A stretch of 64,000 nucleotides of DNA from NCBI RefSeq assembly GCF_000150275.1, contig NW_002060946.1:4111454-4175453 (forward strand). Direction: 5' to 3'. This stretch comes from Trichoplax adhaerens. Its lineage: Eukaryota; Animalia; Placozoa. The notes under the pieces are model-generated. The model saw nothing but the letters and a program-made list of their open reading frames with translations. It searched no databases and had not been told where the DNA came from. The position numbers and the translations under genes are program-made. Shown here piece after piece: positions 1 through 62,624 of this stretch (the stretch's first letter is position 1; every line of letters begins with the position of its first letter).

Positions 1-1443
1 CTTACCTCCATACTGGCCTAAATGGTAGATGTAGTGATAGCCAGCAAATTTCTTCTTGGCTTTTAACCTTAGATCGTCAAGCGTTGCATCAATTTGCTCG
101 CTTCTTATTAACCGATTTGCTCATTAGCTCCCCAAAACAAGAGAAGTCTTTACTCTCCGCTTTCAACAGTAGCACCACAATTGAAAGCGATAGCTCACAA
201 TTTTCCATCGATGAGATAGAACAGTGGTTAGTTAAAACACCCTTGATAACACGTATTGCCGATGAATTATTTATGGCATGTTTTATGGATCAAACTTCTG
301 TCCATCAAGAAGAAAAATCCCACATAGTTCAAGCGGATAAAACTGATTTGGATGATGATGATGATGATGAAAATGATGAGACTACTACAGATATACTTAT
401 ACCTCTATGCATATTAGAAGATAATAAACCATCGCAGTTACTGACCTATTCCACAATTTTAATGTTAAATAATCACTTGGAACATCAACTACGACATGAA
501 TGGAAATTACTCTTTTCCAGTTTACAACATGGTGAAAGTTTTACTACATTGTGCAGCAGAATTATTAACAAAGGTCCGACTTTGCTAATCATTCGTGATA
601 TAAAGGGTCATATATTTGGAGGATTCGCTTCACAAAATTGGAATTATAAATCTCAATTCTTTGGTAAACTATTTTATCCATTTTGATAGATTGAACGGAA
701 TGATACATTGTGGCAATTTTAAAATAATTATTAAATGAATAATATTAAATGAATAATTTCAGTTCTATCTAGCAAAGTAGTAGTATTACGCATGATAAGT
801 TTCATTTTACCTTTGCTAATTACTTTATCGATCAATTTTTCACTTTTAGGCGATTCGAAATGTTTTTTGTTTACCGCAAATCCTAAAATGAGTGTATATA
901 CAACTACTAGATACAATAAGAATTATCAGTATCTAAACTGTAACATGCAGACGTTACCTAATGGCCTAGTAAGTGGAACACATGATCCATAATTCGCCAA
1001 TATGTTTAAAATACCGACAATAAAATAATATCTTGTTTGCTTAATCTATTGCCTAAAGGGTATGGGCGGTCAATTTGATTATTTTGGATTATGGATTGAT
1101 GCGGAATACGGTAAAGGCCATAGTATGGCTGGACCAAAGTGTACAACCTACGGAAGTCCACAATTGTCCGGGAATAAAACTTTTGAGATTGATTGTCTGG
1201 AAGTATGGAGTATCGGAAAAAAGAAGAAGGACGATGATAATGATGTATATTGTTATAAAATAGTTGTAACCAGAATAGTGATGTAATAGTAGTATATTTA
1301 TCCATTAATCCTCCTATTGCTTATAATTATTGTAGGAGAATAAAAGAAGTATACTCGATCAAGATCCTAGTGCTAAAGCCCTACTGGAGTTGATGGGTAA
1401 GAAGCAACATAGTGAAGGGCTTAGGGAACCTGAAAATAACTAA
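1..1443 (+). CDS. MEAK7: TLDc-domain protein MEAK7/TLDC1, 3' portion. Exons <1-663, 850-968, 1059-1244, 1336-1443.
   Basis: TLDc motifs WKLLFSSLQHGESF, GPTLLIIRD..GHIFGGFAS, GDSKCFLF, GMGGQFDYFGLWID and CTTYGSPQLS. The last exon KRSILDQDPSAKALLELMGKKQHSEGLRE matches the MEAK7-type C-terminus. All GT-AG joins keep frame; stop TAA at 1441-1443. Confidence 0.9.
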
Positions 1444-6558: not shown

Positions 6559-8356
6559 TACAGTTCCATACGATCAGTAGTACAGTACACTGTACTGTAC
6601 TATACAGTGTACTGTACATAGTACTGTAAAGCCTACAGTATCAGGGAAGAGTCTTTCCCAGAAGTACCGTACTGTACACTCACAGTACTGTAACACGAAA
6701 TCCATTACGTCATGACTATCGACTTTTGCTGGATTAATTTGCATTTGAAAAATCTTCCTTCATCTAGGATGATCTAATGGTTATTTATACATTTTTTGAA
6801 TATTCAAATGTAGTGATGTTTCCGCTGTTATCAATGATACAGAAAGCGTTATGCAGTAACTGATCATTGTATAGGTGCATACTGTGGGTCGGAACGACTC
6901 GAAGATAAAGACCATCAGCAAGGACAGTAATTCTACAATTCTATCATTACTGGTATAGTAGAGTTCAAATGGCTGCGACGATCCATGGACAACTATTTTT
7001 TTTTAGTCGTTCCGTTCATGGTGGATCATAATAATCACTTTATCGTTATTATTATTTAAAAGTGGCGAAGCCAGGCATAAGATATTATAACCATTGTTTC
7101 GCATACAGGTAGCGGTTTTATCTTGTTTATCTTATACTGCAAGCATGCATGTAAAGATTATTGTGTACTGTAGATTGAGTTGCAATCTCGAAATAGAAAT
7201 AATCGACCACCTATTTCAACTTATCCAATGCTACTTGAACTATAGAAAGCGATAACATAAAGACTCGACTAAACTAAAATTCGGGATATAGCTTCCATTA
7301 ATAGCTTGTATTAGCTGCTTATTGGCTGCAATACTCTAGTTCAGTCAATAACATTAGGGATACGATTGGATCAAGGTGCGATACAATTTATTCTCCTATA
7401 GGATTTACTGTAATACTTACTTCAACAAACATGTCTTCTCACAATATTAACAATAAAACAGTCATAAAATTCATTTATCATATCAGATCTGGTGAAAAGT
7501 AGTTATACAATGATAGATGCTACTTGTTTACACTTCATTCTCAAATCGGGATTATACTTCATCGATCAATGATCACGGAAATAACGTTAAAAATTGGCAC
7601 ATCATAATCATATATCATATACCCGTATAAAATAGTATATAAAATACCAAGTCATCAACATATTATAGCTATTAGGCATATGTAACACAATCTATTACTA
7701 GATATTTTACTAACATCCTCATACAATCAATCCATGGAGCTGATTCGTTTATTGAATTAGCATTAAACTTTTGATAAATTTATAAATAGACAAGAATTAC
7801 CCTACTGATCACATCTGCTTCAAAGTGGATAATAAAAATCGGATGAATTAGCTGTAATAATATAATAATAGAATAGAATTCACTAATACATTTAGTTAGC
7901 AATTAGTACAATATAAATATCTTAAGCTCAGTCATACCAAATTACAAAAAGTGGTTAATAATAACAACGTTATTCCGGTATTCCACTTTACTATTTATTT
8001 ACTTTCAGTTATCGTACTCTTCTTATTTTCCAGTTTGAAGACAATGTATGAAAAGCTTTAACAGGCTTAAAAGTGAAACAAAAAATAATCAAAATGGATA
8101 AAGATAGGTTAGAATATGCCACTATATCACTCTATGTATCTAGTGTTATACACGGTATTATCCATCTTTAGTTATTTTCGCTTAGAGAAACTAAAGTGGC
8201 ACATTGCCGATAGTGCTACAATTTACTTTAACGTCATGGCGTCATTTTCATGAACGACAATGCACCCCATTATAAGTCTAGTGGATAATCTTTCCCTATC
8301 TTATTAGGTAATAGCAAAATTTTCATCATGTTTATGTTTATTCTGTTCTGCCTTTA

Positions 8357-20429: not shown

Positions 20430-20615
20430 ACAGTACTGTACAGTGTACAGTGAACAGTCTACAGTACCGGACAGCGGATTACAACTGTACACTGTAGACC
20501 CTGTCAGTTGTACAGTATGAAAAGTCCTTTAATAGAATCCCTTATTAAACAGTATACTGTACTGTACTACAGTATACTGTACTGTACTGCACTGTACCGT
20601 ACTGTACTGCACTGT
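20430..20615. repeat. ACAGT/ACTGT pentamer array immediately upstream of PM20D2
   Basis: Examples are CAGTACTGTACAGTGTACAG and TATACTGTACTGTACTACAGTATACTGTACTGTACTGCACTGTACCGTACTGTACTGCACTG. Confidence 0.85.
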
Positions 20616-20678
20616 TTACTCCTTCTTAACGTAAGGGCAGTGATCGCTAATCGTTGCAAAATATCTTTCAAAGCTGAA

Positions 20679-21890
20679 ATGGCCGACGTAGAAAAGCTTC
20701 GAGAGTTAGCTACCGCTAATATTGACAAACATGCCGATGATTTATACTCTATCAATCAACAAATACATGCTAAACCTGAAATTGCACATCAGGAAGTTTT
20801 TGCTCATCAACTTTTAACCTCATTTTTAGCAAAACAAGGCTTCCAAGTGGAACAACATTACGCCTTGGAAACCGCTTTTAAGGCGACGTTACGATGTGGC
20901 AAAGGTCCTAATGTCGCTGTCCTCTGCGAATACGATGCACTGCCTAAAATTGGCCATGGATGCGGTCACAATTTGATTGCTGAAGCTGGTATCGGCGCTG
21001 CAATAGGCATTCAGGCCGCTATGAAAGCGATCGATGAGGGTCGTGACTTTGGTACGCTAACTGTTTACGGTACACCTGCTGAAGAAGGCCTCGGTGGCAA
21101 AATAGCCATGATTAAACATGGTTGTTTCAATGGTGTTGATTTTGCTATGATGGTTCATGGGAGCTCCTTTGACGCTGGTATCTCCAATTTAGCATCTATG
21201 CTCGATATAGGTATAACTTATCATGGCAGAAATGCCCATGCTGCATTGTGCCCATGGGATGGGATCAATGCTGTCGATGCTGCTGTTTATTGTTATAATT
21301 CTATCTCAGCCATGAGACAACATTTTAAGCCTACATGGCGTGTCCATGGCATCATCACCGATGGAGGTAAATTACCTAGTATTATACCTGATCAATCACA
21401 AATGCAATTCTATCTTAGAGCATTGTCTGAAAAAGATCTTCACATTTTGCTAGCCAAATGTGAAAGTTGCTTTCGTGGCGCTGCAACCGCTACAGGATGT
21501 ACTGTCGATATCCAATATCGAAAAGTTCATAATGATCACTATATTTGTATGCTAAATAATCTCTCCATGGCAAACCGATATGAACAACATGCATCTCGTC
21601 TGGGTGTTCAATTTCCCAGTTATGCTCAGCAACTAACATTACCTGCCGGATCGTCAGACATGGGTAATATTTCACAATTGATACCATCAATACATCCTTT
21701 TTTCGATATTGGTACTAAGGTTCCCAAGCATAGTAGTGCATTTACTGAAGCTTCTGCTACTGCTATTGCTCACGAAAAGACGTTAATTGCCGCAAAATCG
21801 ATGGCACTAGTTGCCATTGATATCTTTACGGATCCTCAATTTCGCCAGCAAATTATACAAGAATTCAATGATGCTAAAGTTGATTCTTAA
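20679..21890 (+). CDS. PM20D2: Peptidase M20 domain-containing protein 2 (ACY1L2/Xaa-Arg dipeptidase family), single exon, 403 aa
   Basis: IHAKPEIAHQE, LCEYDALPKIGHGCGHNLIAE, GTPAEEGLGGKI, YHGRNAHAALCPWDGINAVDAAV, GSSDMGNIS, PSIHP. The likely start is ATG at 20679 (MADVEK); the 5' extension of the ORF-track frame is pentamer repeat. Confidence 0.92.
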   Translation: MADVEKLRELATANIDKHADDLYSINQQIHAKPEIAHQEVFAHQLLTSFLAKQGFQVEQHYALETAFKATLRCGKGPNVAVLCEYDALPKIGHGCGHNLIAEAGIGAAIGIQAAMKAIDEGRDFGTLTVYGTPAEEGLGGKIAMIKHGCFNGVDFAMMVHGSSFDAGISNLASMLDIGITYHGRNAHAALCPWDGINAVDAAVYCYNSISAMRQHFKPTWRVHGIITDGGKLPSIIPDQSQMQFYLRALSEKDLHILLAKCESCFRGAATATGCTVDIQYRKVHNDHYICMLNNLSMANRYEQHASRLGVQFPSYAQQLTLPAGSSDMGNISQLIPSIHPFFDIGTKVPKHSSAFTEASATAIAHEKTLIAAKSMALVAIDIFTDPQFRQQIIQEFNDAKVDS

Positions 21891-30420: not shown

Positions 30421-32266
30421 CAGCTGATGCTTGGTCAATTTACTGTAAATGTGCACAGCGTCGGCACAAAATGATTGAACTCAATACTGTTAGCTAAAAG
30501 AAAAAAAATTACATGCCTTTAATACTCAGGCTAAATACAACTCTGCTTCCGGAGCTTATGGTCTAGAAGGATGAATTAATGCGAAAAAAGCTTCTACAAG
30601 CACAATCAGCTAATACACTTCATTTATCGATATCAATAACGGCGGTATATACTCGGTAGATCCAAGCATACTAAACTCACGTTACTATACATATATTCAT
30701 AATTATATAATGAATTAACTATCCTACCTTGGTAATTTCTTGATGACAATGCATTTAAGGAAGTAATTATATATATCAGTAGCACATACCCGGTAGTTAG
30801 TATAATTTATTAATTTCATTAATTTACCACAGGAGTTCACGCTACCGTTAGTAGCGTACCGTGCAGATATCCATTATTCACTATTCCATTTTAGTATTTT
30901 ATTCTACGTTAATAAATTTAGGGTCAATATAACTTTCAATCGATAAAATGTATCATCTGCCCACATTTTTACTGGCATGAAAGCAATTTAATTTAAAAGA
31001 AAAATTTTATTAGGCTTATGCCACATAATGATTATTATTAACATATTAGTTTATTCTAGAATTTGACAATTAATTTTTTCTCGTAGTATCAAGAATAATG
31101 ATGTAATTGTTATATCGAAGTTAAATTTTACTAAATAAAGTGTAGCTTTCCTTAACCGTGTCATCTTAAAAAACGAATAAACAAGGAAAGTAGGATCGGT
31201 ATACTTGTGAGAACTTGATATACTCGCATTAAATTACTTATATTATGATATCGACAACTCATTATATGAAATTAAAGATGGAAACACTGTATTTCATTCA
31301 GTAATATCATATATCAAAATAAGAGGGAGCAACCTGTTAGTTAAAACTCTGTATAAACTAGAAGATAGGGTAGTTTATTAATTATGATCAATATACTTAT
31401 GCACTAGTTCGAGCCCGGTAACCATATATTAAGCTTCTCACTTAGATAATCGTATTATGGAGGTGCTCCAATAGATCAACGATCGCTATAACTGTATTTT
31501 ACTGATATCGCCAGAGTTTTACATTTAAGAATAATAAATCAGAAATTCACGTCAAAGTGCTACTGCAGTCATAGTACTGCAACTACCCAAATTAATACTT
31601 TACAGTCATTAGCCAATGAATGTTAATTTGTCGTTTAATTAATTGTTAGAGTTAAAATAAAAGGAAGGAACTAATTATAAAAGATTACAAGGGATACAAT
31701 AGATCACATGAAAGCCGCATAGAATAATGTATCATTTAGTAGCTGCATACGCTCCACTATTAATATAAAATTTTGCATCGGTATAACAGACAATGTCGTA
31801 AAAACATTGAATAGTATTCGATACAATACACACAATGATTCATACTCCGAGCCATCAATTGGTGCCACCAACATGTTTACTCCGAGTCGTAAACCCATAA
31901 ATCGCGATATTGCTGTACTATATCGACATTAAAAGCGATATTAGTAGTGCGATCCAAGCCATAAAATTAGATACCGTTATATATCGCAGTTTTGGCTGCG
32001 GCAAACGAGTATAATTATTGAGTTGATCGTAGAGAATCACCTGTAGAATCTATTTCTACAATCTATCCGTAGTTTTCATCTGCCATTTTTATATAGTATA
32101 CAGTAAATCCTATTCATTTCTTCCAGCTTGCTAGGTTTAAAGTTAATATTACTTCCATAAACGGATTAGTTTTTCAGAAGAAGTTGGACTTTGTTTTCCA
32201 TATTGTTAATCCTTTCAACGAATCAACTATAACATTTTTACTTATACCCGTGACTGGTACTATCGG

Positions 32267-35200
32267 ATGACCTACAAAATGGCAGCCGTTTACTTTGTAA
32301 CAGGTTTACTCCTTTTGCTGCTAGGAATTGGTAACGCTGTTATGGCTCTATCAGCAACTATTGATATAGCCTTCATCGTAAAAAGCCTTAATCCTACAGA
32401 TTTATTTTCTACTCCATCCGTTCTTGGCAATTCGGTAAGGAATCATTCAGACAAAGTAAAAATCGAAAACATTCCCAGTGGTAAAATCAATTAATGACTA
32501 AACCTTTATTCGATTACTAACTTATAATCAAGATTCCTTTTAGTTAATAAAGATGAGACTTATTTTTCTAAGTAGATTATCATTTTCATCTAAATTAAGC
32601 TAATTATAAGTTAGAAGGCAATTAACATTTCCTTGAAATGGTGTCATTGTCAGTTGATTACAATTATGCTACCTAACTCAAATGGATGCTGCCCTTTTTA
32701 CCGATCTTGTTCAATACATCCAAATACCGATCGTAAACATTTTTGAATAAACTTTTCTTAGCTACCTAGCCGGTAGAAGTTAAAATCTTCACTTCACAGA
32801 GTGAAATGAAACTCCATAAACTTCAGATGGAACATGAATAATACTTTTAAAGCGCGTTTTTACTCATAGTAGGCCAATAATTATAATCAGTATTGGTATA
32901 GCAGCAGAAACTGCAGACAGATCGTCAGCGTATTTCTGTCAATATTTGACAAAGACTACTATTGTTACTTTTTCGTTTCTGATGCCTTAAAAATACGAGC
33001 ATTTTAACTACTGTACTATATGATCATTATGAATTGTAATTAGAATTGCTTAAGAATAAGATTCATAATTTTAAAGTAGATTGAAATATTGACTAGTTCT
33101 AATGTAGAAAAAGATATGCTAAAACAGTTTCCTTAGTAGCATAACTCACAGTAGTGAGCTGAAATGCTTTTATTACCGTACTCTTGCACGATGAAAATCT
33201 ATTTATAATCTTTTATTAGACATTGAGTAGCATGAGTATCATGAAAATAGCGAATAAGTTCAACATTACAAGCCTGATCGCCTATCAATAAATTCATTTA
33301 ATAAACAGCATGCGAGAAAAATTTACCGTTAGCTAACTTGCAGTGGATCGTTAACATAACGAGTACAGATTATCCGTATAATAAACTATTGATAAAAATT
33401 ACCAAATTTTTATCTTTGAGGCATAGCTTTATTTCCTCTTAATCTCATTCTTGCAAAATTATCGATAATTATGTAATAAAAAAGGCTTGAAAAGATCTAA
33501 ATTATTTATTTTCTCCGATTTTATAGATGATTATTACTGGGATTCTTTCTATCATTCAATATTTTACTCCCACTAATGCAATGGTACGTTTATTTACAAA
33601 CTGCTTTAGATAGCATAGAGAAATAAATAAATTTGATTTCGATATAGCAAAATGATATTCATGATTAGTATCCAGTTTGCCTTTTAATTTGAAGTGAGAA
33701 TGAATGTTTCCATGCCATTTAGTTATAGATACGATACGCAAATCTAATCGTTCTACCTTCACCTAATTCTTTTTTTGCTTTTATGTTCTAGTTGGTTGCT
33801 ATTTATATCTTCAACATTCATACCTTAACATTACTACCGATATCCATCTTTACTTCCATCTACTACTATGCTACTATTCCACGATTGAATTTAGCAACTC
33901 GTCAATCTATCGCCATTTTTGCAGTTATTGTCCTTTTCTATCTATCTACAATCATCATTTCCGTTTACATTGCCATGCAATATTTCACCGATTTTATAAC
34001 CAGTCGTCATTATCATAAGCTATCTGATTTAAAAGAGGAACAAAATAGTGACAGATCCATTAATGAGGGTGAAATAGCCTTTCGTCTTTCATCGACCAAA
34101 AAGATTAGAAATGTAGCCATATTTCAGTTAATATGTAGCGGTGTTCTTATCGCATCTGGACTGGCAGATCTTTTCTTGTTTCAAGGTTTATACAGTAATC
34201 AGACATTTTATGCTGGCAGCTTAGTAAGTTTTTCTTAAAAAGATAATGAATTACTTCGACTTCAATTTCGAAATTTAAATGCCTGTTTTGTTGTTATTAT
34301 GGATATATTTATCAACCCTCAATTAATACAATTTTATATAAATAACTAAAATACTTATATAGTTATGTGTGACCAGCATTTGTGGAATTCTTTCGGAGCA
34401 TAAAAACATTGACGAAGGGGTAGGCAGACTTTGGTTTATTGTATGAATAAAATTTCCTCTGCACTATAATTAATTTAAAACTATAATCATATAATGCAGC
34501 GATGATATTAATGACGTATACTCACTCATACATTATTATTATTAATTTAAACTTCCCATGTAGATGATTTGGTTTGGCATATTATCGCGCGTAAGCCGCT
34601 TAATATGTATTTCAACAATCGGAATCAATGTTCTTGCCTATCTTAATACTTCAGCAGCAGCTCTATATGAAGATCCGGACAATATTCGTTCCTTATTCAT
34701 ATGCGTGTCTGTTATGTTGGTACTGGGATTTTTAACTTCGTTTTATATTACGTTAAAGCTGACGTCGAATATTGGCTTCTTTAATGTCATCTCTGTATGG
34801 AAAAAGCGACGTGCGGAACAAAGTTATAAACCAGAGCTATGCTCACTCACTACTGTCTTGAGCACTATCCAATTTTTGGCTGCCTTATTTTTATGGGCTA
34901 GTGGAGTCGCTGCTATGCTTTATGGTAAAGCTCAACACCTCTCTTTCAGTACTTTCTCTACCGCTAGTTGGGTAAGTTTTTTATACTATTAATGATGATT
35001 TAAGTAGGTGTTGCATGTGAAAAACATAATAACCATGATCAAACCGAAATCTAATAAGAAGATGAATATATTGGACCGTGGATTGCTAAAAAATATCATA
35101 TTTTTCAGTATTCCATGGATAGGCTAAGTCCAAATTCTCACTTAGGATAATGTGCGCCATAAGATGAGAGTTTGTTGCAATAGCTGAAGCTTAATCGTTC

Positions 35201-36315
35201 TGTTTTCATTTCTGCATTTAGGTCATTGTAGCAGCTAAAGTTGGCGTAAGCCTTAACCGGATGAAATCTGTTCAAATTGTAAGTAGAAAGACAGCAATGA
35301 CATGGTATACAACTGTTTTAGAAGTCTATCATAAATAAAAAAGATAAATACGAGTATATCTACTGTACATATATGAGCACATATTAAATAGTTAAAAATT
35401 TTAATAAATTTCACCAAAGATATCATTCTCTTATTTTAATTAGAACATACCTTACGTGGCAATATCTATTTTATCTACTTTGCTGCTATTGAATAATATG
35501 ATAGTCACTGGCATGGAGTACTATCGCTTGTATAAAAGTGACATAACCATTCGATTATCCATTCAAATTACTTTCGGCTGCATCATAGGTGCTGCCATCA
35601 TTTCTTTCCTCATTACCTTTTTCTCAGCCATAAAGATTGCCTGTGCAAACGATATTACATGTCGCAAAATAACTCCTACTTCAAAGGTACAGCATCGAAA
35701 GATTCATGACCTGACTCATATTTTTATTGATCTCCGTTGACATTTAAGTCCGTAAAGCGAAACGATTTCCACGTAGACAACTATTTCACTAGTATTTATA
35801 AAAGATTTAAAGAATATCAGTAGACTTAATTTAGTATTAGTTGATAGCACTGAGCATTCCAATATACTTGTATGTAAAGATACATTCGCAATATAATATC
35901 TTAAATCTAAGCTACCAGAATAATTTAGGAAAATACGTATACTCGTATCTATTATCGTCATTCTTTTTTATGGTGTATTTGGGCTATGAAATAGATCGAC
36001 TATGGTAAATATTGGAAAAGTATTTTGATTTAAGGACTGCTTTAATTCTCAATATATACCAGTATCGTATAATAGGGATACTTGGATATTTGTTGTTATT
36101 ACTGCATCATGCTTGTAGTTTTAAACTGGAATTTTAAAAATGCGATAAATTCGTCGATTTTCGAACTGATTAAACAATCTCACCTAATCTTGGATTCTGA
36201 TCAATTCTAGGCTACTAATACACGAAAACTAACGAAAGACATGGGATCAAGGAACATGCTAACTGCTAATGAAGATAATAATGAACAGGAGGACTCAAGA
36301 GAGTCTGCAAACTGA
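32267..36315 (+). CDS. Multi-pass membrane protein (~508 aa, ~12 TM) made of three tandem MS4A/CD20-like units. Exons 32267-32434, 33527-33583, 33792-34223, 34363-34419, 34564-34971, 35222-35278, 35444-35686, 36211-36315.
   Basis: All seven introns are GT-AG and phase 0, and the joined frame is open to TGA at 36313-36315. There are three 57-nt exons and repeating hydrophobic segments. The gene model is well supported; the family assignment is inferred. Confidence 0.75.
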
Positions 36316-37350
36316 GAAATCTTTCATTCGTTTCTCACTAATCTTGAAGACATCATTCCCTATTTTTCGTTTATTTCTTTCCAGGAATGAGGCATTAATA
36401 TCTAGTGTTAATGATAAATTACATATCCTAAGTGAATAAATAACTTGTAGTCTTTTTAAAGACGAAATAATCTATGTTTATATATCTTTCTGAACTGTAA
36501 TGATCTCATTCCATTTTAGTTAATCTACGGTAATACACGAAAAGAAAATCTACAAAATTGCATTTGTAATTTATTTCAATCTAATCATGCATGTATCCTA
36601 TACTGTAATACCAAGCAGGCGGTTTAGCCTAACGATATCTTAAATACATAGTTGGATATGGGATATTAAACTTAGAATATATTATTGAGCTAATATTTAT
36701 GAGTGCTTATCGTTAATAAATGAATTATAGCCTCAGTGCATTATTGACGTCTCTTTGTTCATAAAATACTAGTCGTCAACTCGATAATTTCAAATAGGAT
36801 TTTTCAGTTACCTCCTTTGATCGTTACTTTATTAACGGTAAGATCATTAGACCCTATCTAGGAACGTATTCAAAATCTTTAGCTCGATTATGACAGTACG
36901 TAGATAGAATATCTTGGCATTTAAATCGAAACATAGTCATTTAATCCATTAACAATTGTCCCAGCTTCAATATTTTGTATTGTTAAGTAGATAAATTACG
37001 AATAATGGTTATAACTTGTACGAGTATTAAAATAGTCTTAAAGATAACCAAGAGGTATAATCTATGATGGTAAAGAAAGTGAAGACGCTATATCTTTTAT
37101 TAAATACGTATTATTGAAATTCTATCTAGATGAGATTATGAATATTTTATGCTATTCCATTCTCTGATTACTTAATATCGCGGGTATAATTTCTTAGAAA
37201 ATAAGAATTAATCTATGCAGACGTACACATATCTTTGACTATTCAAGCAGTTAGTCTTCATTTTGCAACACAGTTTGTAGATATAGCGTTAAAATCGGTA
37301 AAAGGATTTGTAATATCAGCGTTGAAAGAATTCAGACGTAATTAAAGTAC

Positions 37351-59108: not shown

Positions 59109-61082
59109 TTAATAGTAGCCAGCAAAGTTTCTAGGTCTCTTTCTTCTATTTCCATGATAATAATGGCCATTAGAGGCAGTACGTTTTGGATGAGTGAATT
59201 TGTCATGACTATTCCTTTCGTAATAATTATTGCGTGTGTTCGAATGGTGATGGCGATATCGATCACCATTATTATTATTGTCTAGTCGATGGCTATTACT
59301 ATCATGGGAGCGCATATCAGAGGTAGATTTAGAGTGCCTATTGCTTTCATGAATTTGATTTTTCAAATTGGTTACAGAATTCATTAAAGAGGATGCCGCA
59401 GGATTAGTAATAGGATGAACATTGGTTTTCGATGGCTTAATATCTTGACTATCGTTATTTTTATTATTATTTTGCAATCGGTTTTCATTGGGTCGGTGAT
59501 TGGATCCAGACAGTTGAATATCCCTATCATGATAGTTATTGATTGCATTGGTGGATGTTGACGAATTGCGATGATTCACATTATTATTATTGGTATTAGC
59601 ATTGGTGTTGGTGTCCATATTGTCGAGATGGCCATCATTAGCTCGAGTTGCAGTTCCTTTAGCATGATAGGTACTAAGATGTTTCTTAAGTGAAATAGCA
59701 CTAGTAAATGTCATCGAGCATAAAGAACACTGTATTAATCCATGTTGACGATTATGTTCATCAAGTTCAGTAACAGTATTGAATTTTTCCGAACAAGTTG
59801 AGCACGGATAAACTTGAGAGCCATTACTTTCTGAATTACTGGAAATATTAACATCAACTTCATCCACTGAGTCAGGATTATCGATTCCATGTTGAATGAT
59901 CAGATGGCGCTTTAAGGATAATTTATTACTAAAAAATTTTCTACAGTAGCTACATCGATAAGCGCCGGAGTGTTTCTTAACATGTTCACGTAAATAATAA
60001 ACGCTAGTAAAGGATTTCGAGCAAGAATCGCATGAATAACGTAATCGGCCAGAACGTACAGTAATTGCAGAATCCTTATTGATATCGTTATCATCGTTTT
60101 TATCCATATCTAATTCCTGTTGATCATCATCGCCTCGATCATTGAGTAATTCTTTCGATTGGCGAGTAATCATTCTCCTAGTAATCATACCTCTTTCAGG
60201 TTCTGCATCAACTAGATGATGATTTATATCGACGTGATTACTTCTATGATGGCCTTCTGTTCGCGCAGCTTTACCAATTTCCGCATCATTTTCTACTTCC
60301 TCATCATCATTTGTATTAACATGGTTGTTCTCATTCGCATGCCCATTACTTGGATGCACAATTTTATCTTGATAGTCACGGCGTGTTTGAGTTTGATCCT
60401 GATTGCTATTTTGATTGGCAAATAGTGGTACATTACTCTCATCGTAGTGATTTTGTCGTGTCATTGCCATTCCATTGGTGTTATTACTTGTTGCAGTAAG
60501 ATGGTGATTTTCTTCAATAGGATGAAAGCGGTGATTGGTGATCGTATTGACCATGTTAACATCTTTACTCGATGGATTAGAAGTCTCACGATGGTTAAGA
60601 GGATGTTGTGCTGGTTGTGGTTGTTGTTGAGTTTGTTTAACCGCTTTTTGAAAGCTGTAAAATTCTTTTTCATGATATTTTTTCATATGCTTGTTGACTG
60701 CCGAGATACAACTGAATGGTTTGCTGCAAAATTTGCATACACATGAACTTGGCTGGTTATGCATTTTAACGTGAGCTTTCATGTAGGTTAGGCTAGTAAA
60801 TTGTTTATTACAGATTTCACATTCGTAATAATTTTTACCACTTTCATCTTCGCCCACTTTACTAATAAATGAGGATCGTTTAGCACTATCTTGTGAATCG
60901 TGATTATCACCGTTACTGCTGGTTGCTGTTGGAGTGGTAGTAGTATTGCTAGAATTGTGCTGGCTGTTGTTATTAGCATTGATGGGAATAGTACGATAGC
61001 CATCTTTCTCTCGGCTAGGTGTTGATGTGGTTAATTTTTGACTGTTTTGTTGATTCAGACTAGATCGATTACCCTCCATGGA

Positions 61083-61115
<33 letters not shown>

Positions 61116-61668
61116 GAACAAGTCATCATCGCTATGAGAGCTAGAATTCATGGATGGCAGGTGATTAGGATAATAATTAGCATGATAGCGAAAATGATGG
61201 TTTTGCCGGTCTTCTTCATTATTACTGGCTATCGATGAATCATTTCGAGAATGGTAGTATTGTCGACTTTGCTCCTCAGAGCGATGGATAATTGGATGAG
61301 TGGATGCTATAATGTGCTTGCTATGATCGGCTGTATCGCTATGATTCGATGTTCTATCATCATCAGCAACTTCGCCATCGGCATGTTCATCATCGGGTGA
61401 TATAACTCCGTTATGATAATCTTTAATATGCTTATTGAGTGAGGATGTACAACTGAAAAGTTTATTGCATTCAGGGCAACGGAAGGAATCAGGTATCTCA
61501 TGAACACGAATATGCGCTTTCAAATAAGAATTACTGCTAAAAGATTTACCACAATATTTACATGTAGGTGATCGCTTTAACATACTAGGTGATAATTCTT
61601 GTCGTTCATTGTTGGCAAATTTAACGGGCGATAGACGTTGTATATTAGAATTATTTTGCTGTTGATGC

Positions 61669-61702
<34 letters not shown>

Positions 61703-62624
61703 GCTGCTGCTGCTGCGGCTGCTGTTGTTGTTGTATCAGTAAACCACTAGCGTTGGCAATGGCGTAGCTGCCATCGATAACATATTTGCCGGCTGCTACT
61801 GGATATTGTGCAAGGCATGGTACATGTGAATAAGGATCCATGATTGCTGCCGCTATTGGATTGTGCCGATTGGCAGCAGAATAAGTGTAAAGGCTTGGAT
61901 CAACGAGTGGTCGAGGTAGGCAATTATTTAAAACTGCAGCATTGCTTCTATCATAGACTTTGGAAAGATTGCTGCTACTATCATTACTGTTTGTATCTTT
62001 GTCTTTCTTTTCTAACCCATTCATAACATGATCACTGTTTTCCTTGTCTTCTTCAGCTTTTCCTCTTGCTGGATTATTTTCGCCTACTTTGCTCGTTTGA
62101 TAACTACGTAATGATTCTTTTCGAGTACTGATATGATCCCGTTTACCTTGATCGTTTTCTTCGCCCTCTTCGTTATCATCAGCAAGCAATACTAACCAAG
62201 CGATAACACTGGATGTTAGCGTAGCTACGGAAGAAGCCATGGCGATGTTGAGTGTTTCGCCTAATGATGATGATTGATCTAAGTCAATGGATGATTTAAC
62301 AACTTCATCTGCCCATAACGTTAACTGAGCTAAAGAATAACGGACGTAATCCAATTTTGAAGTGAATTGATCGGAAGATGCTTGAGAGGAAATTCTGTTT
62401 AAATTATATGAAATATTTAACAAGCATTTTTGCATAGAATGGTAAGATTCTTTGATTAAATTGGCTTCATCGGGGTTTTCAGTTGTAGACCTTTTATACC
62501 CAACTGGACTAAATTTATCTGCAAAAATAACGATATCATGGCAGATTGAGGTGATTTCGCCAGCTGTACAATCGTCATTACCCAAGAGTTCTTGTAATTT
62601 TTTTAATGACACAGCCGTTAATTC
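59109..62624 (-). CDS. C2H2 zinc-finger protein with 8 fingers in 4 separated pairs and polyQ/polyN tracts. This is a 3.5-kb terminal exon; upstream exons were not located.
   Basis: Finger pairs are CKYC..HIRVH/CPEC..HIKDYH, CEIC..HVKMH/CKFC..HMKKYH, CDSC..HVKKH/CSYC..HLIIQH and CSTC..HNRQH/CSLC..HLSTYH. The acceptor tttag|GAA lies at 62625/62624. The ORF-track start (GTG) is not a true start. Confidence 0.88.
61657..61733 (-). repeat. CAA/CAG trinucleotide tract encoding polyQ. An AAT polyN tract also lies at about 61083-61118.
   Basis: (TGT/TGC)n on the + strand within the zinc-finger exon. Confidence 0.9.

What the first reader, a model, noticed from the sequence alone, without database searches (positions are those of the whole stretch)
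32267..36315. Triplicated MS4A/CD20-like protein: three 4-TM units in one chain, each keeping a 57-nt phase-0 exon
Seen in sequence: the ORF-track fragments join through seven phase-0 GT-AG introns into one ~508-aa hydrophobic protein. Three exons are exactly 57 nt and sit at the same position in three repeats: 33527-33583 MIITGILSIIQYFTPTNAM, 34363-34419 LCVTSICGILSEHKNIDEG and 35222-35278 VIVAAKVGVSLNRMKSVQI. Each follows a TM1 plus half-TM2 segment (e.g. IFQLICSGVLIASG..FYAGSL, TIQFLAALFLWASG..FSTASW) and precedes two more TMs. Recalled knowledge: vertebrate MS4A genes carry a 19-codon phase-0 exon completing TM2 (CD20 YIISGSLLAATEKNSRKCL; FceRI-beta FSISGMLSIISERRNATYL, compare MIITGILSII), and they act as oligomeric single-unit receptors, channels or chemosensors. 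Inference: this is an internally triplicated MS4A, a covalent pseudo-heterotrimer with strongly diverged units, in an early-branching animal. It could be a novel chemosensor or channel architecture.
Basis: partly seen in the sequence, partly recalled or inferred. Interest (0 to 1): 0.85.

Follow-up and report, generated by a model that had tools for sequence, protein, structure and literature searches.

The report
Three-unit CD20-like membrane protein, Trichoplax
A real, expressed gene of the placozoan Trichoplax adhaerens encodes one 12-helix membrane protein made of three very diverged four-helix units. Each unit keeps the exon plan of the small CD20-like genes of the same genome, so this is an ancient three-in-one fusion of a known kind of protein rather than a new kind.

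Summary
At 32267-36315 (+) eight exons join through seven phase-0 GT-AG introns into a 508-aa, 12-TM protein, with three 57-nt exons at the stated coordinates. RNA contigs from four studies show introns 1-6 exactly as modelled, and one 2146-nt contig crosses all three units. Intron 7 is spliced in two runs and retained in two.

The gene is TRIADDRAFT_55647 of Trichoplax adhaerens, "uncharacterized". Its database model wrongly skips exon 7.

No Pfam CD20 match exists for any exon or for the whole proteins. An exhaustive search finds only placozoan relatives. However, single-unit CD20-like genes of the same genome share the plan exon A | 57-nt exon B | exon C. They align in register with the units, strongly for unit 1 and weakly for units 2 and 3.

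A 12-TM paralog keeps the architecture. Language-model features point first to MLC1, then to CD20. The fold test failed, with pLDDT 43.

Tandem MS4A genes are already known in vertebrates (PMC2826416). This scan had already noted single-unit CD20-like clusters elsewhere in this genome, but not this gene. Verdict: new variant of a known kind.

The parts
32267..32434 (+). Exon 1 (56 codons): start codon, TM1 and the first half of TM2 of unit 1. It is the equivalent of exon A of the single-unit CD20-like genes.
   Evidence: Sequence and splice sites. In-frame stop 21 codons upstream. Junction 32434|33527 seen in four runs, and transcript contigs run at least 139 nt upstream of 32100.
33527..33583 (+). 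Exon 2, 57 nt, phase 0: the rest of TM2 and the short cytoplasmic turn of unit 1 (equivalent of exon B).
   Evidence: Aligned in register with the 57-nt exons of the single-unit genes, z 3.9, rank 1 of 25 shifts.
33792..34223 (+). Exon 3 (144 codons): TM3 and TM4 of unit 1, a K/R-rich cytoplasmic linker, then TM1 and half of TM2 of unit 2. It is a fusion of an exon C with the next exon A.
   Evidence: It has a 72% identical fragment from another placozoan (P0002) and a 32% identical paralogous exon at C1403.
34363..34419 (+). Exon 4, 57 nt, phase 0: the rest of TM2 of unit 2.
34564..34971 (+). Exon 5 (136 codons): TM3 and TM4 of unit 2, a linker, then TM1 and half of TM2 of unit 3.
35222..35278 (+). 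Exon 6, 57 nt, phase 0: the rest of TM2 of unit 3.
35444..35686 (+). Exon 7 (81 codons): TM3 and TM4 of unit 3. The database protein TRIADDRAFT_55647 lacks it.
   Evidence: Junction 35278|35444 in all four runs. P0001 lacks this stretch. MAFFT places it on TM3-TM4 of unit 1.
35687..35740 (+). Alternative C-terminus when intron 7 is retained: 17 further codons and a stop.
   Evidence: Contigs of runs X5 and X9 run unspliced from 35445 to 36238 and 36474. The open frame 35456-35740 is listed.
36211..36315 (+). Exon 8 (34 codons plus stop): acidic cytoplasmic tail of the spliced form.
   Evidence: Junction 35686|36211 in runs X6 and X7, which also show a second donor at 36004.

Best explanation
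TRIADDRAFT_55647 is an expressed gene for a 12-TM protein of about 508 aa, built from three tandem four-helix units.

Each unit keeps the exon plan of the single-unit CD20-like tetraspan genes of the same genome:
- exon A: N-terminal part, TM1 and half of TM2;
- exon B: a phase-0 exon of 57 nt with the rest of TM2;
- exon C: TM3 and TM4.
In this gene, exon C of one unit is fused in frame to exon A of the next unit.

The gene therefore arose by in-frame triplication or fusion of a CD20-like gene. This happened before the duplication that gave the 12-TM paralog (TRIADDRAFT_59681 / TrispH2_000269). Other placozoan lineages carry fragments of both genes, so it also happened before those lineages split.

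By inference it works as a covalently linked hetero-oligomer of CD20-like bundles. The N-terminus, C-terminus and inter-unit linkers lie in the cytoplasm, and very little of the protein is exposed outside. Such a protein would act as a membrane scaffold or modulator of ion flux or signalling, in the manner of CD20 dimers and MLC1 trimers, rather than as a transporter.

Within the part covered by four sequences, the best conserved patch is the outer end of TM1 of unit 2 (a G-L-A-D motif) plus the following short loop. This is the likeliest functional site.

Shown: the gene model, its expression, 12 hydrophobic segments, the paralog and the shared exon plan. Inferred: homology of all three units to CD20-like proteins. 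Speculative: topology details and function.
For: Gene model and expression:
- Model.
- Splicing and a single transcript.
- Selection: 6 synonymous against 3 conservative changes among strains, and 72% identity to a fragment from another placozoan.

Paralog: it is collinear at 30% identity, with exons of 162|57|435|57|396|51|231 nt, all phase 0.

Internal repeat:
- Unit 2 against unit 3 gives Smith-Waterman z 5.8, reached by 0 of 300 shuffles, and the alignment is in register.
- Scores anchored on the intron rank shift 0 or +/-1 first to fourth of 29 shifts for all unit pairs.

Single-unit CD20-like genes:
- Exon A hits Pfam CD20 positions 2-40 at E 1.9e-4 and 5.9e-3.
- All three genes have a 57-nt phase-0 exon B.

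Link between single-unit genes and the units:
- Anchored, ungapped scores: unit 1 z 5.5-6.7, unit 3 z 3.8, unit 2 z 2.6. Each ranks first of 25 shifts in the windows quoted.
- Smith-Waterman of gene s1 against paralog unit 1: z 7.4.
- BLASTP: 14 of 28 identical, E 6e-4, and both stretches start at the first residue of an exon.
- hhalign: P 4.4e-4 for unit 1. The six-unit profiles give P 0.0037 for the exon A parts and P 0.0066 for the exon C parts, both in register.
- An independent nine-gene array: unit 3 z 3.5 and unit 2 z 2.0, both rank 1 of 25.

Other: ESM features list MLC1 and then CD20 for both paralogs. K/R-rich linkers and tail fit a cytoplasmic location.
Against: - Pfam CD20 gives no hit at E up to 10 for any exon or for P0001 and P0004.
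- PDB profile searches with the units are blank.
- Exhaustive phmmer with exon 3 finds only placozoan proteins.
- Unit 1 against unit 2 is not significant on its own. The hhalign match of unit 2 to the single-unit genes is out of register.
- The link to CD20 is a chain of moderate steps, and the single-unit genes themselves stay under the Pfam cut-off when tested exon by exon.
- Hydrophobic segments inflate such scores. A chance hit to a reaction-centre chain at E 0.5 shows the noise level.
- The AlphaFold2 model was unusable, with pLDDT 43.
- Atlas scores of 0.85-0.87 are leads only.
- No functional data exist.
Confidence: 0.7

Rival explanations
1. It is the placozoan relative of MLC1, the vertebrate 8-TM protein that forms trimers, and has gained a third unit. 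On this reading its closest kin is MLC1 rather than MS4A or CD20 proper, and it would regulate volume-activated ion fluxes.
For: For both paralogs, queried separately, the best ESM feature hits are MLC1 clusters (score 0.87; 177 and 187 shared features, above the 170 mark). CD20 follows at 0.84-0.85. One cluster carries both MLC1 and CD20 Pfam labels. MLC1 has 8 TM segments with both termini inside and forms trimers (PMC8633789), so it is also a multiple of four helices.
Against: Scores under 0.9 are leads only. No MLC1 cluster is among the rows shown by the Atlas structure search of P0004. The Pfam MLC1 model PF27925 is not in the local library, so there was no test. MLC1 is reported as confined to vertebrates. 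The protein here has three units, not two. That MLC1 is a duplicated CD20-like unit rests on my recollection and on the mixed-label cluster.
Confidence: 0.2
2. It is a placozoan-specific 12-TM protein unrelated to CD20. On this reading the 4+4+4 pattern reflects an internal triplication of some other tetraspan, and the similarity to CD20-like genes comes from hydrophobic composition and chance.
For: There are no Pfam or PDB hits. Only placozoan relatives turn up among 1.84 billion proteins. Weak tetraspan cross-hits are common: Claudin_2, Tetraspanin and MARVEL appear, and a reaction-centre chain.
Against: Shift 0 is the single best register by a wide margin (177 against -70). Exon boundaries coincide in position, phase and length. 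A composition-adjusted BLASTP hit starts at residue 1 of both exons. The reversed-profile control is much weaker. The G-x-x-D motif at the end of TM1 is shared by the single-unit genes and by units 1 and 2.
Confidence: 0.1
3. The model is an artefact: three neighbouring 4-TM genes wrongly joined.
For: None was found.
Against: Single spliced contigs in four runs join exon 1 to exon 5 or beyond in one open frame. No start or stop codons lie between the units, and exons 3 and 5 each span a unit boundary. The paralog has the same layout.
Confidence: 0.01

Closest known systems
CD20-like family (Pfam PF04103: MS4A, TMEM176, sarcospan) and its single-unit members in Trichoplax
   Same: Each unit has four TM helices with a short TM2-TM3 turn. 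TM2 is split by a phase-0 intron and is followed by an exon of about 57 nt. The units are similar, in register, to Trichoplax genes whose first exon hits PF04103. A G-x-x-D motif at the end of TM1 is shared.
   Different: Three units sit in one chain. No unit reaches any Pfam CD20 score. Extracellular loop 2 is very short (14-18 aa). The units are far more diverged from each other than the subunits of vertebrate tandem MS4A genes.
Tandem 'long' MS4A genes of chicken, opossum and platypus (Zuccolo et al. 2010, PMC2826416)
   Same: Two or more complete 4-TM MS4A units lie in one polypeptide. The authors read this as support for oligomers being the working form.
   Different: Those genes have 2 or 6 closely similar subunits, are lineage-specific and were known from gene predictions. 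This gene has 3 strongly diverged units, is confirmed by RNA, and is conserved as two ancient paralogs across placozoans.
MLC1 (Pfam PF27925), 8 TM, trimeric, vertebrate astrocyte membrane protein
   Same: The helix count is a multiple of four and both termini are cytoplasmic. It is the best language-model feature match for both paralogs.
   Different: MLC1 has 8 TM helices, not 12. It is known only in vertebrates. No profile or fold test could be run here.

Membership tests
CD20-like family (Pfam PF04103) | Match to the Pfam profile at or above the gathering score (27.9 bits) | tested here: not met
   No CD20 hit at E up to 10 for exons 1, 3, 5, 7 and 8, nor for the whole database proteins P0001 and P0004. 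The own-genome scan with PF04103 did not pick up the window. The joined 508-aa model itself was not submitted, because it has no reference.
CD20-like family (Pfam PF04103) | Four TM helices per unit, N- and C-termini cytoplasmic, short cytoplasmic TM2-TM3 turn | tested here: met
   Twelve hydrophobic segments lie in a 4+4+4 pattern. K/R-rich stretches are found in the linkers (8 and 5 residues) and the tail (9 residues). The TM2-TM3 turns are 3-8 residues long. These are hydropathy and positive-inside reasoning only, with no dedicated topology predictor.
CD20-like family (Pfam PF04103) | Exon plan: a phase-0 intron inside TM2, followed by an exon of about 57 nt | tested here: met
   Met relative to the Trichoplax CD20-like genes: 57-nt exon B at L009 3741-3797, L009 9440-9496 and L010 (reverse complement) 6928-6984, and a 60-nt exon B in the nine-gene array. 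The Pfam and PDB alignments of exon A end at profile position 40 and at ...WGGIM of human CD20. The human exon boundary itself is recalled knowledge and was not checked.
CD20-like family (Pfam PF04103) | Significant sequence similarity to accepted members | tested here: inconclusive
   Similarity is only indirect, through Trichoplax single-unit genes that are themselves under the cut-off exon by exon (E 1.9e-4, 22 bits). Unit 1 is well supported. Units 2 and 3 are weak but in register.
CD20-like family (Pfam PF04103) | CD20-like four-helix bundle fold | tested here: inconclusive
   The AlphaFold2 model of paralog P0004 with a 4-row alignment had pLDDT 43 and pTM 0.34, too poor for a fold search. 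The rows shown by the Atlas structure search include neither a CD20 nor an MLC1 cluster.
Vertebrate MS4A clade proper | Grouping with MS4A genes in a tree, and the MS4A signature in TM1-TM2 | not tested
   No MS4A sequences could be obtained through the tools. Zuccolo et al. 2010 found no MS4A genes outside jawed vertebrates.
MLC1 (Pfam PF27925) | Match to the MLC1 profile | not testable with these tools
   PF27925 is absent from the local Pfam copy. The only evidence is ESM feature scores of 0.85-0.87.
MLC1 (Pfam PF27925) | Eight TM helices (two four-helix halves) | tested here: not met
   This protein and its paralog have twelve TM segments in three units. MLC1 has eight.

The most novel reading that the evidence does not exclude
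The two placozoan 12-TM proteins are the invertebrate sister of MLC1. On this reading, ancient covalent fusions of CD20-like bundles gave three units here and two in MLC1, which then trimerises. The three diverged units would form a pseudo-threefold assembly around a shared ion or ligand site marked by the conserved G-L-A-D motif and loop of unit 2. That would give MLC1 its first non-vertebrate relative, and would offer a one-chain model of how CD20-fold units assemble.
Probability: 0.15. Interest if true: 0.7.

Novelty: new variant of a known kind. Interest (0 to 1): 0.5.

Why it matters
- It corrects the model of an "uncharacterized" Trichoplax gene. The database protein lacks two helices.
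- It shows by RNA that three CD20-like units are made as one chain.
- It shows that the exon plan A | 57 nt | C is shared between single-unit and fused genes in one of the earliest-branching animals.
- If the human intron position is confirmed, this argues that the CD20-like family predates vertebrates. Zuccolo et al. 2010 concluded the opposite.
- It supports the idea that oligomers are the working form of these proteins.
- A fixed 1:1:1 hetero-oligomer in one chain is a convenient object for structural and functional work on a family whose molecular function is still debated.

Tried and rejected
- Pfam on single exons and on the database proteins gave no CD20 hit and only noise.
- PDB sequence and profile searches with the whole-protein alignment and with the six-unit exon-A profile were blank.
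- AlphaFold2 on P0004 with the 4 available sequences gave pLDDT 43. I therefore ran no fold search and did not use the second structure job. The family has too few sequences, and exon-fragment rows would add no inter-helix signal.
- The search for homologous proteins was run three times: with P0001, with a Trichoplax CD20-like exon, and with alignment A2. Only placozoan proteins came back, so no MS4A or MLC1 sequences could be gathered for a direct profile comparison.
- PF27925 is not in the local Pfam copy.
The other-placozoan loci behind P0002 and P0003 could therefore not be read.
- Literature searches found nothing on an MLC1-MS4A link, on MS4A in Trichoplax, on a 57-bp MS4A exon, or on the locus names.
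- Pairwise hhalign of units with only two rows each was weak: unit 2 against unit 3 P 0.024, the other pairs not significant.
- Global identity figures between units are not informative and are not used.
- MFS or another transporter fold was rejected. The Atlas structure TM-scores are 0.26-0.31, and the repeat is 3x4 helices, not 2x6.
- The joined 508-aa model was never sent to any search, fold or Atlas tool, because a spliced model has no reference. Exons were sent by reference, and the database proteins P0001 and P0004 stood in for the whole protein. The joined translation was used only inside local scripts.
Full report
WHAT IS THERE

The window is AT-rich eukaryotic DNA from a genome of 105.6 Mb in 1414 contigs. 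The database protein that matches the locus is TRIADDRAFT_55647, "uncharacterized protein [Trichoplax adhaerens]".

Reading the + strand between 32267 and 36315 gives eight exons:
- E1 32267-32434
- E2 33527-33583
- E3 33792-34223
- E4 34363-34419
- E5 34564-34971
- E6 35222-35278
- E7 35444-35686
- E8 36211-36315

All exon lengths are multiples of three and all introns are GT..AG. The joined frame is open for 508 codons. The three short exons are each exactly 57 nt. An in-frame stop lies 21 codons upstream of the first ATG. A 19-residue hydropathy window finds twelve hydrophobic segments in a 4+4+4 pattern. The second helix of each unit is split by the intron in front of the 57-nt exon.

EXPRESSION AND SPLICING

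Contigs of four runs from four studies were laid on 32100-36500. One run is on record as RNA. The other three are guessed to be RNA, but they carry spliced forms.

All four show introns 1 to 6 exactly as modelled. Single contigs join exon 1 through exon 5, and a 2146-nt contig of run X5 runs from upstream of the ATG to beyond exon 7. The three units are therefore made as one transcript, which removes the "three separate genes" rival.

Intron 7 differs between runs:
- It is spliced (35686|36211) in X6 and X7. These runs also show a second donor at 36004.
- It is retained in X5 and X9. The protein then ends 17 codons into the intron (stop at 35738-35740) and keeps all 12 helices.

The database model (P0001, 423 aa) starts at the second Met and joins exon 6 directly to exon 8. 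No run shows that junction, so the public model lacks the last two helices.

Differences between strains in the contigs are 6 synonymous and 3 conservative replacements. This is as expected for a gene under purifying selection.

RELATIVES

An exhaustive phmmer search of exon 3 against 1.84 billion representative proteins returned five proteins:
- P0001, the gene itself.
- P0002, a 72% identical fragment, probably the ortholog in another placozoan.
- P0004, a 490-aa protein named TrispH2_000269 of Trichoplax sp. H2.
- P0003, a fragment 54-57% identical to P0004.
- P0005, a spurious repetitive protein.

The own genome holds the paralog at C1403. Its exons are 162|57|435|57|396|51|231 nt, all phase 0. 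It aligns collinearly with the model over all 12 helices at 30% identity. The three-unit architecture therefore predates the duplication of the two genes. Because other placozoans carry fragments of both genes, it also predates the split of those lineages.

IS IT AN INTERNAL TRIPLICATION?

- Unit 2 against unit 3 gives a collinear Smith-Waterman alignment with z 5.8. None of 300 shuffles reaches it, and the 57-nt exons align on each other.
- Unit 1 against unit 3 gives z 2.1, in register.
- Unit 1 against unit 2 is not significant on its own.
- Ungapped scores anchored on the first residue of the short exon, summed over both paralogs, place shift 0 or +/-1 at rank 1 to 4 of 29 shifts for every unit pair and window tried.
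- MAFFT spontaneously placed exon 7 (TM3-TM4 of unit 3) on TM3-TM4 of unit 1, through a shared Y-Y...R-x-S-I motif in the outer loop.

The repeat is real but old.

IS THE UNIT CD20-LIKE?

Direct tests fail. Pfam CD20 gives nothing at E up to 10 on the exons or on P0001 and P0004. PDB profile searches are blank.

The link comes through single-unit genes of the same genome. A scan of the genome with PF04103 found three weak first-exon matches. I modelled the three genes.

Each has three parts:
- Exon A holds the N-terminus, TM1 and half of TM2, and ends just after a P-I-W-x-G motif.
- Exon B is a 57-nt phase-0 exon that starts Y-[FL]-[IM]-[AS]-G.
- Exon C holds TM3 and TM4.

Exon A alone hits Pfam CD20 positions 2-40 at E 1.9e-4 and 5.9e-3. 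A profile of the three exons A finds only human CD20 chains among 177,635 PDB sequences. That alignment runs to the last residue of the exon and to ...WGGIM of CD20. The E-values of 4-9 are at noise level, however: the exon C profile gets a chance hit at E 0.5.

This A | 57 nt | C plan is exactly the unit plan of the window's gene. There, each exon C is fused in frame to the next exon A.

Sequence similarity follows the same register.
- Anchored on the start of exon B, without gaps, the single-unit genes against unit 1 score 177 at shift 0, and -70 at the next best shift (z 6.7).
- Unit 3 gives z 3.8 over exon B plus the start of exon C. Unit 2 gives z 2.6 over the wider window that also takes in exon A. 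In each of those windows shift 0 ranks first of 25.
- Smith-Waterman of gene s1 against unit 1 of the paralog gives z 7.4.
- Composition-adjusted BLASTP finds 14 of 28 identical residues, E 6e-4. The match starts at the first residue of the exon in both proteins.
- hhalign of the unit 1 profile against the single-unit genes gives P 4.4e-4 over 59 columns in register. The reversed control gives 0.033.
- Profiles of the six exon-A equivalents and of the six exon-C equivalents against the single-unit profiles give P 0.0037 (45 columns, end to end) and P 0.0066 (from the exon start).

A note from this scan (s1-764959) led me to a nine-gene CD20-like array 3.1 Mb downstream on the same contig. I read it myself. 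It has the same plan, with one exon B of 60 nt. Its exon C starts align best at shift 0 with unit 3 (z 3.5) and unit 2 (z 2.0). Its own Pfam CD20 hits are only E 0.1.

A G-x-x-D motif at the outer end of TM1 is shared by two of the single-unit genes, by unit 1 of the paralog, and by unit 2 of both paralogs.

I therefore judge the units to be homologous to the placozoan CD20-like genes (about 0.8) and, through them, to the CD20-like superfamily (about 0.7). Membership of MS4A proper is not shown.

OTHER LEADS

ESM Atlas features, queried separately for the paralog and for units 1-2 of the window's protein, list MLC1 clusters first (0.87; 177 and 187 shared features). CD20 follows at 0.84-0.85. 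One cluster is labelled with both families. Scores under 0.9 are leads only.

MLC1 has eight TM helices, both ends inside, and forms trimers (PMC8633789). The Pfam MLC1 model is not in the local library, so this rival is untested.

The Atlas's own model of P0004 (pTM 0.75) is nearest to an unnamed 828-aa nematode cluster, with TM-score 0.67 over 452 residues. MFS rows score about 0.3. My AlphaFold2 run had only four sequences and gave pLDDT 43, so I made no fold search.

HOW IT LIKELY WORKS

Shown: one chain, twelve helices, three diverged units, purifying selection, two ancient paralogs.

Inferred from the K/R distribution: the N-terminus, both inter-unit linkers, the short turns encoded at the end of each 57-nt exon, and the tail are cytoplasmic. 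Only short loops face outside, and one of them carries an N-T-S sequon.

Inferred by analogy: CD20 works as a dimer and MLC1 as a trimer, and tandem MS4A genes have been read as evidence for oligomers (PMC2826416). On that basis the protein is most likely a fixed 1:1:1 hetero-oligomer of CD20-like bundles. It would act as a membrane scaffold or as a modulator of ion flux or signalling.

Within the region covered by four sequences, 10 of 19 invariant columns cluster in TM1, the loop and the start of TM2 of unit 2 (G197 to G216 of P0004). This marks the likeliest functional site.

A role as chemosensor or channel is possible but has no support here.

NOVELTY

Multi-unit MS4A genes (2 or 6 subunits) are published for chicken, opossum and platypus. 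CD20-like single-unit genes of Trichoplax had already been noted by this scan.

New here are:
- an RNA-confirmed three-unit protein with strongly diverged units;
- its conservation as two paralogs across placozoans;
- the demonstration that its exons are fused copies of the family's A|B|C plan;
- the correction of the public gene model.

This makes it a new variant of a known kind.

LIMITS

- The joined 508-aa model was not submitted to any remote search, fold or Atlas tool, because a spliced model has no reference. Exons were searched by reference, and P0001 and P0004 stood in for the whole protein.
It could not be verified.

Noticed in passing
window 35222-36315: The public protein TRIADDRAFT_55647 (423 aa) joins exon 6 directly to exon 8 and starts at the second Met. 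All four runs instead show exon 6 joined to exon 7, so the public model lacks TM11 and TM12.
   Followed up: yes
window 35686-36211: Intron 7 is alternatively processed. It is spliced in runs X6 and X7, retained in X5 and X9 (which gives a different 17-residue C-terminus), and has a second donor at 36004 joined to 36211.
   Followed up: partly
window 35278-35445: Three runs report the intron 6 junction one base to the right (35279|35445, ends TA..GA), and one run reports the canonical 35278|35444. This is most simply an A/G difference at the first base of exon 7 (Asn or Asp at codon 394) in some strains, not a non-canonical splice.
   Followed up: no
L008 3714-8448 (G000:C1403:179713-184447): The paralogous 12-TM gene has short exons of 57, 57 and 51 nt. 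Its T. adhaerens database model TRIADDRAFT_59681 (320 aa, P0007) lacks large parts that the Trichoplax sp. H2 model (490 aa, P0004) contains.
   Followed up: partly
L009 3391-4279 and 7688-9951 (G000:C1409); L010 reverse strand (G000:C1408): Three single-unit CD20-like genes share the exon plan A | 57 nt | C. Two of them are tandem neighbours. The third has a 2.7-kb intron before its exon B and a long, low-complexity, Asn/Ser/Thr-rich C-terminal exon of about 210 aa.
   Followed up: partly
L011-L014 (G000:C1411:7319000-7358999, minus strand): The nine-gene array of CD20-like tetraspans noted earlier by the scan has the same three-exon plan, with one exon B of 60 nt. One of its first exons scores better on Claudin_2 (E 7.7e-4) than on CD20 (E 0.11), which shows how unspecific weak tetraspan hits are.
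   Followed up: partly
P0004 (ESM Atlas structure search): The Atlas model of the paralog (pTM 0.75) is closest to an unnamed cluster of 828-aa nematode proteins, with TM-score 0.67 over 452 aligned residues. The 12-helix arrangement may therefore recur outside placozoans.
   Followed up: no
window 84-686 (+), 20508-21890 (+), 59109-62612 (-): Neighbouring open frames carry a TLDc domain, an M20 peptidase dimerisation domain, and an apparently intronless 1167-aa frame with many C2H2 zinc fingers. They are unrelated to the finding.
   Followed up: no
P0005: An 842-aa repetitive protein matched exon 3 in ten short stretches. It is a low-complexity artefact, not a relative.
   Followed up: no
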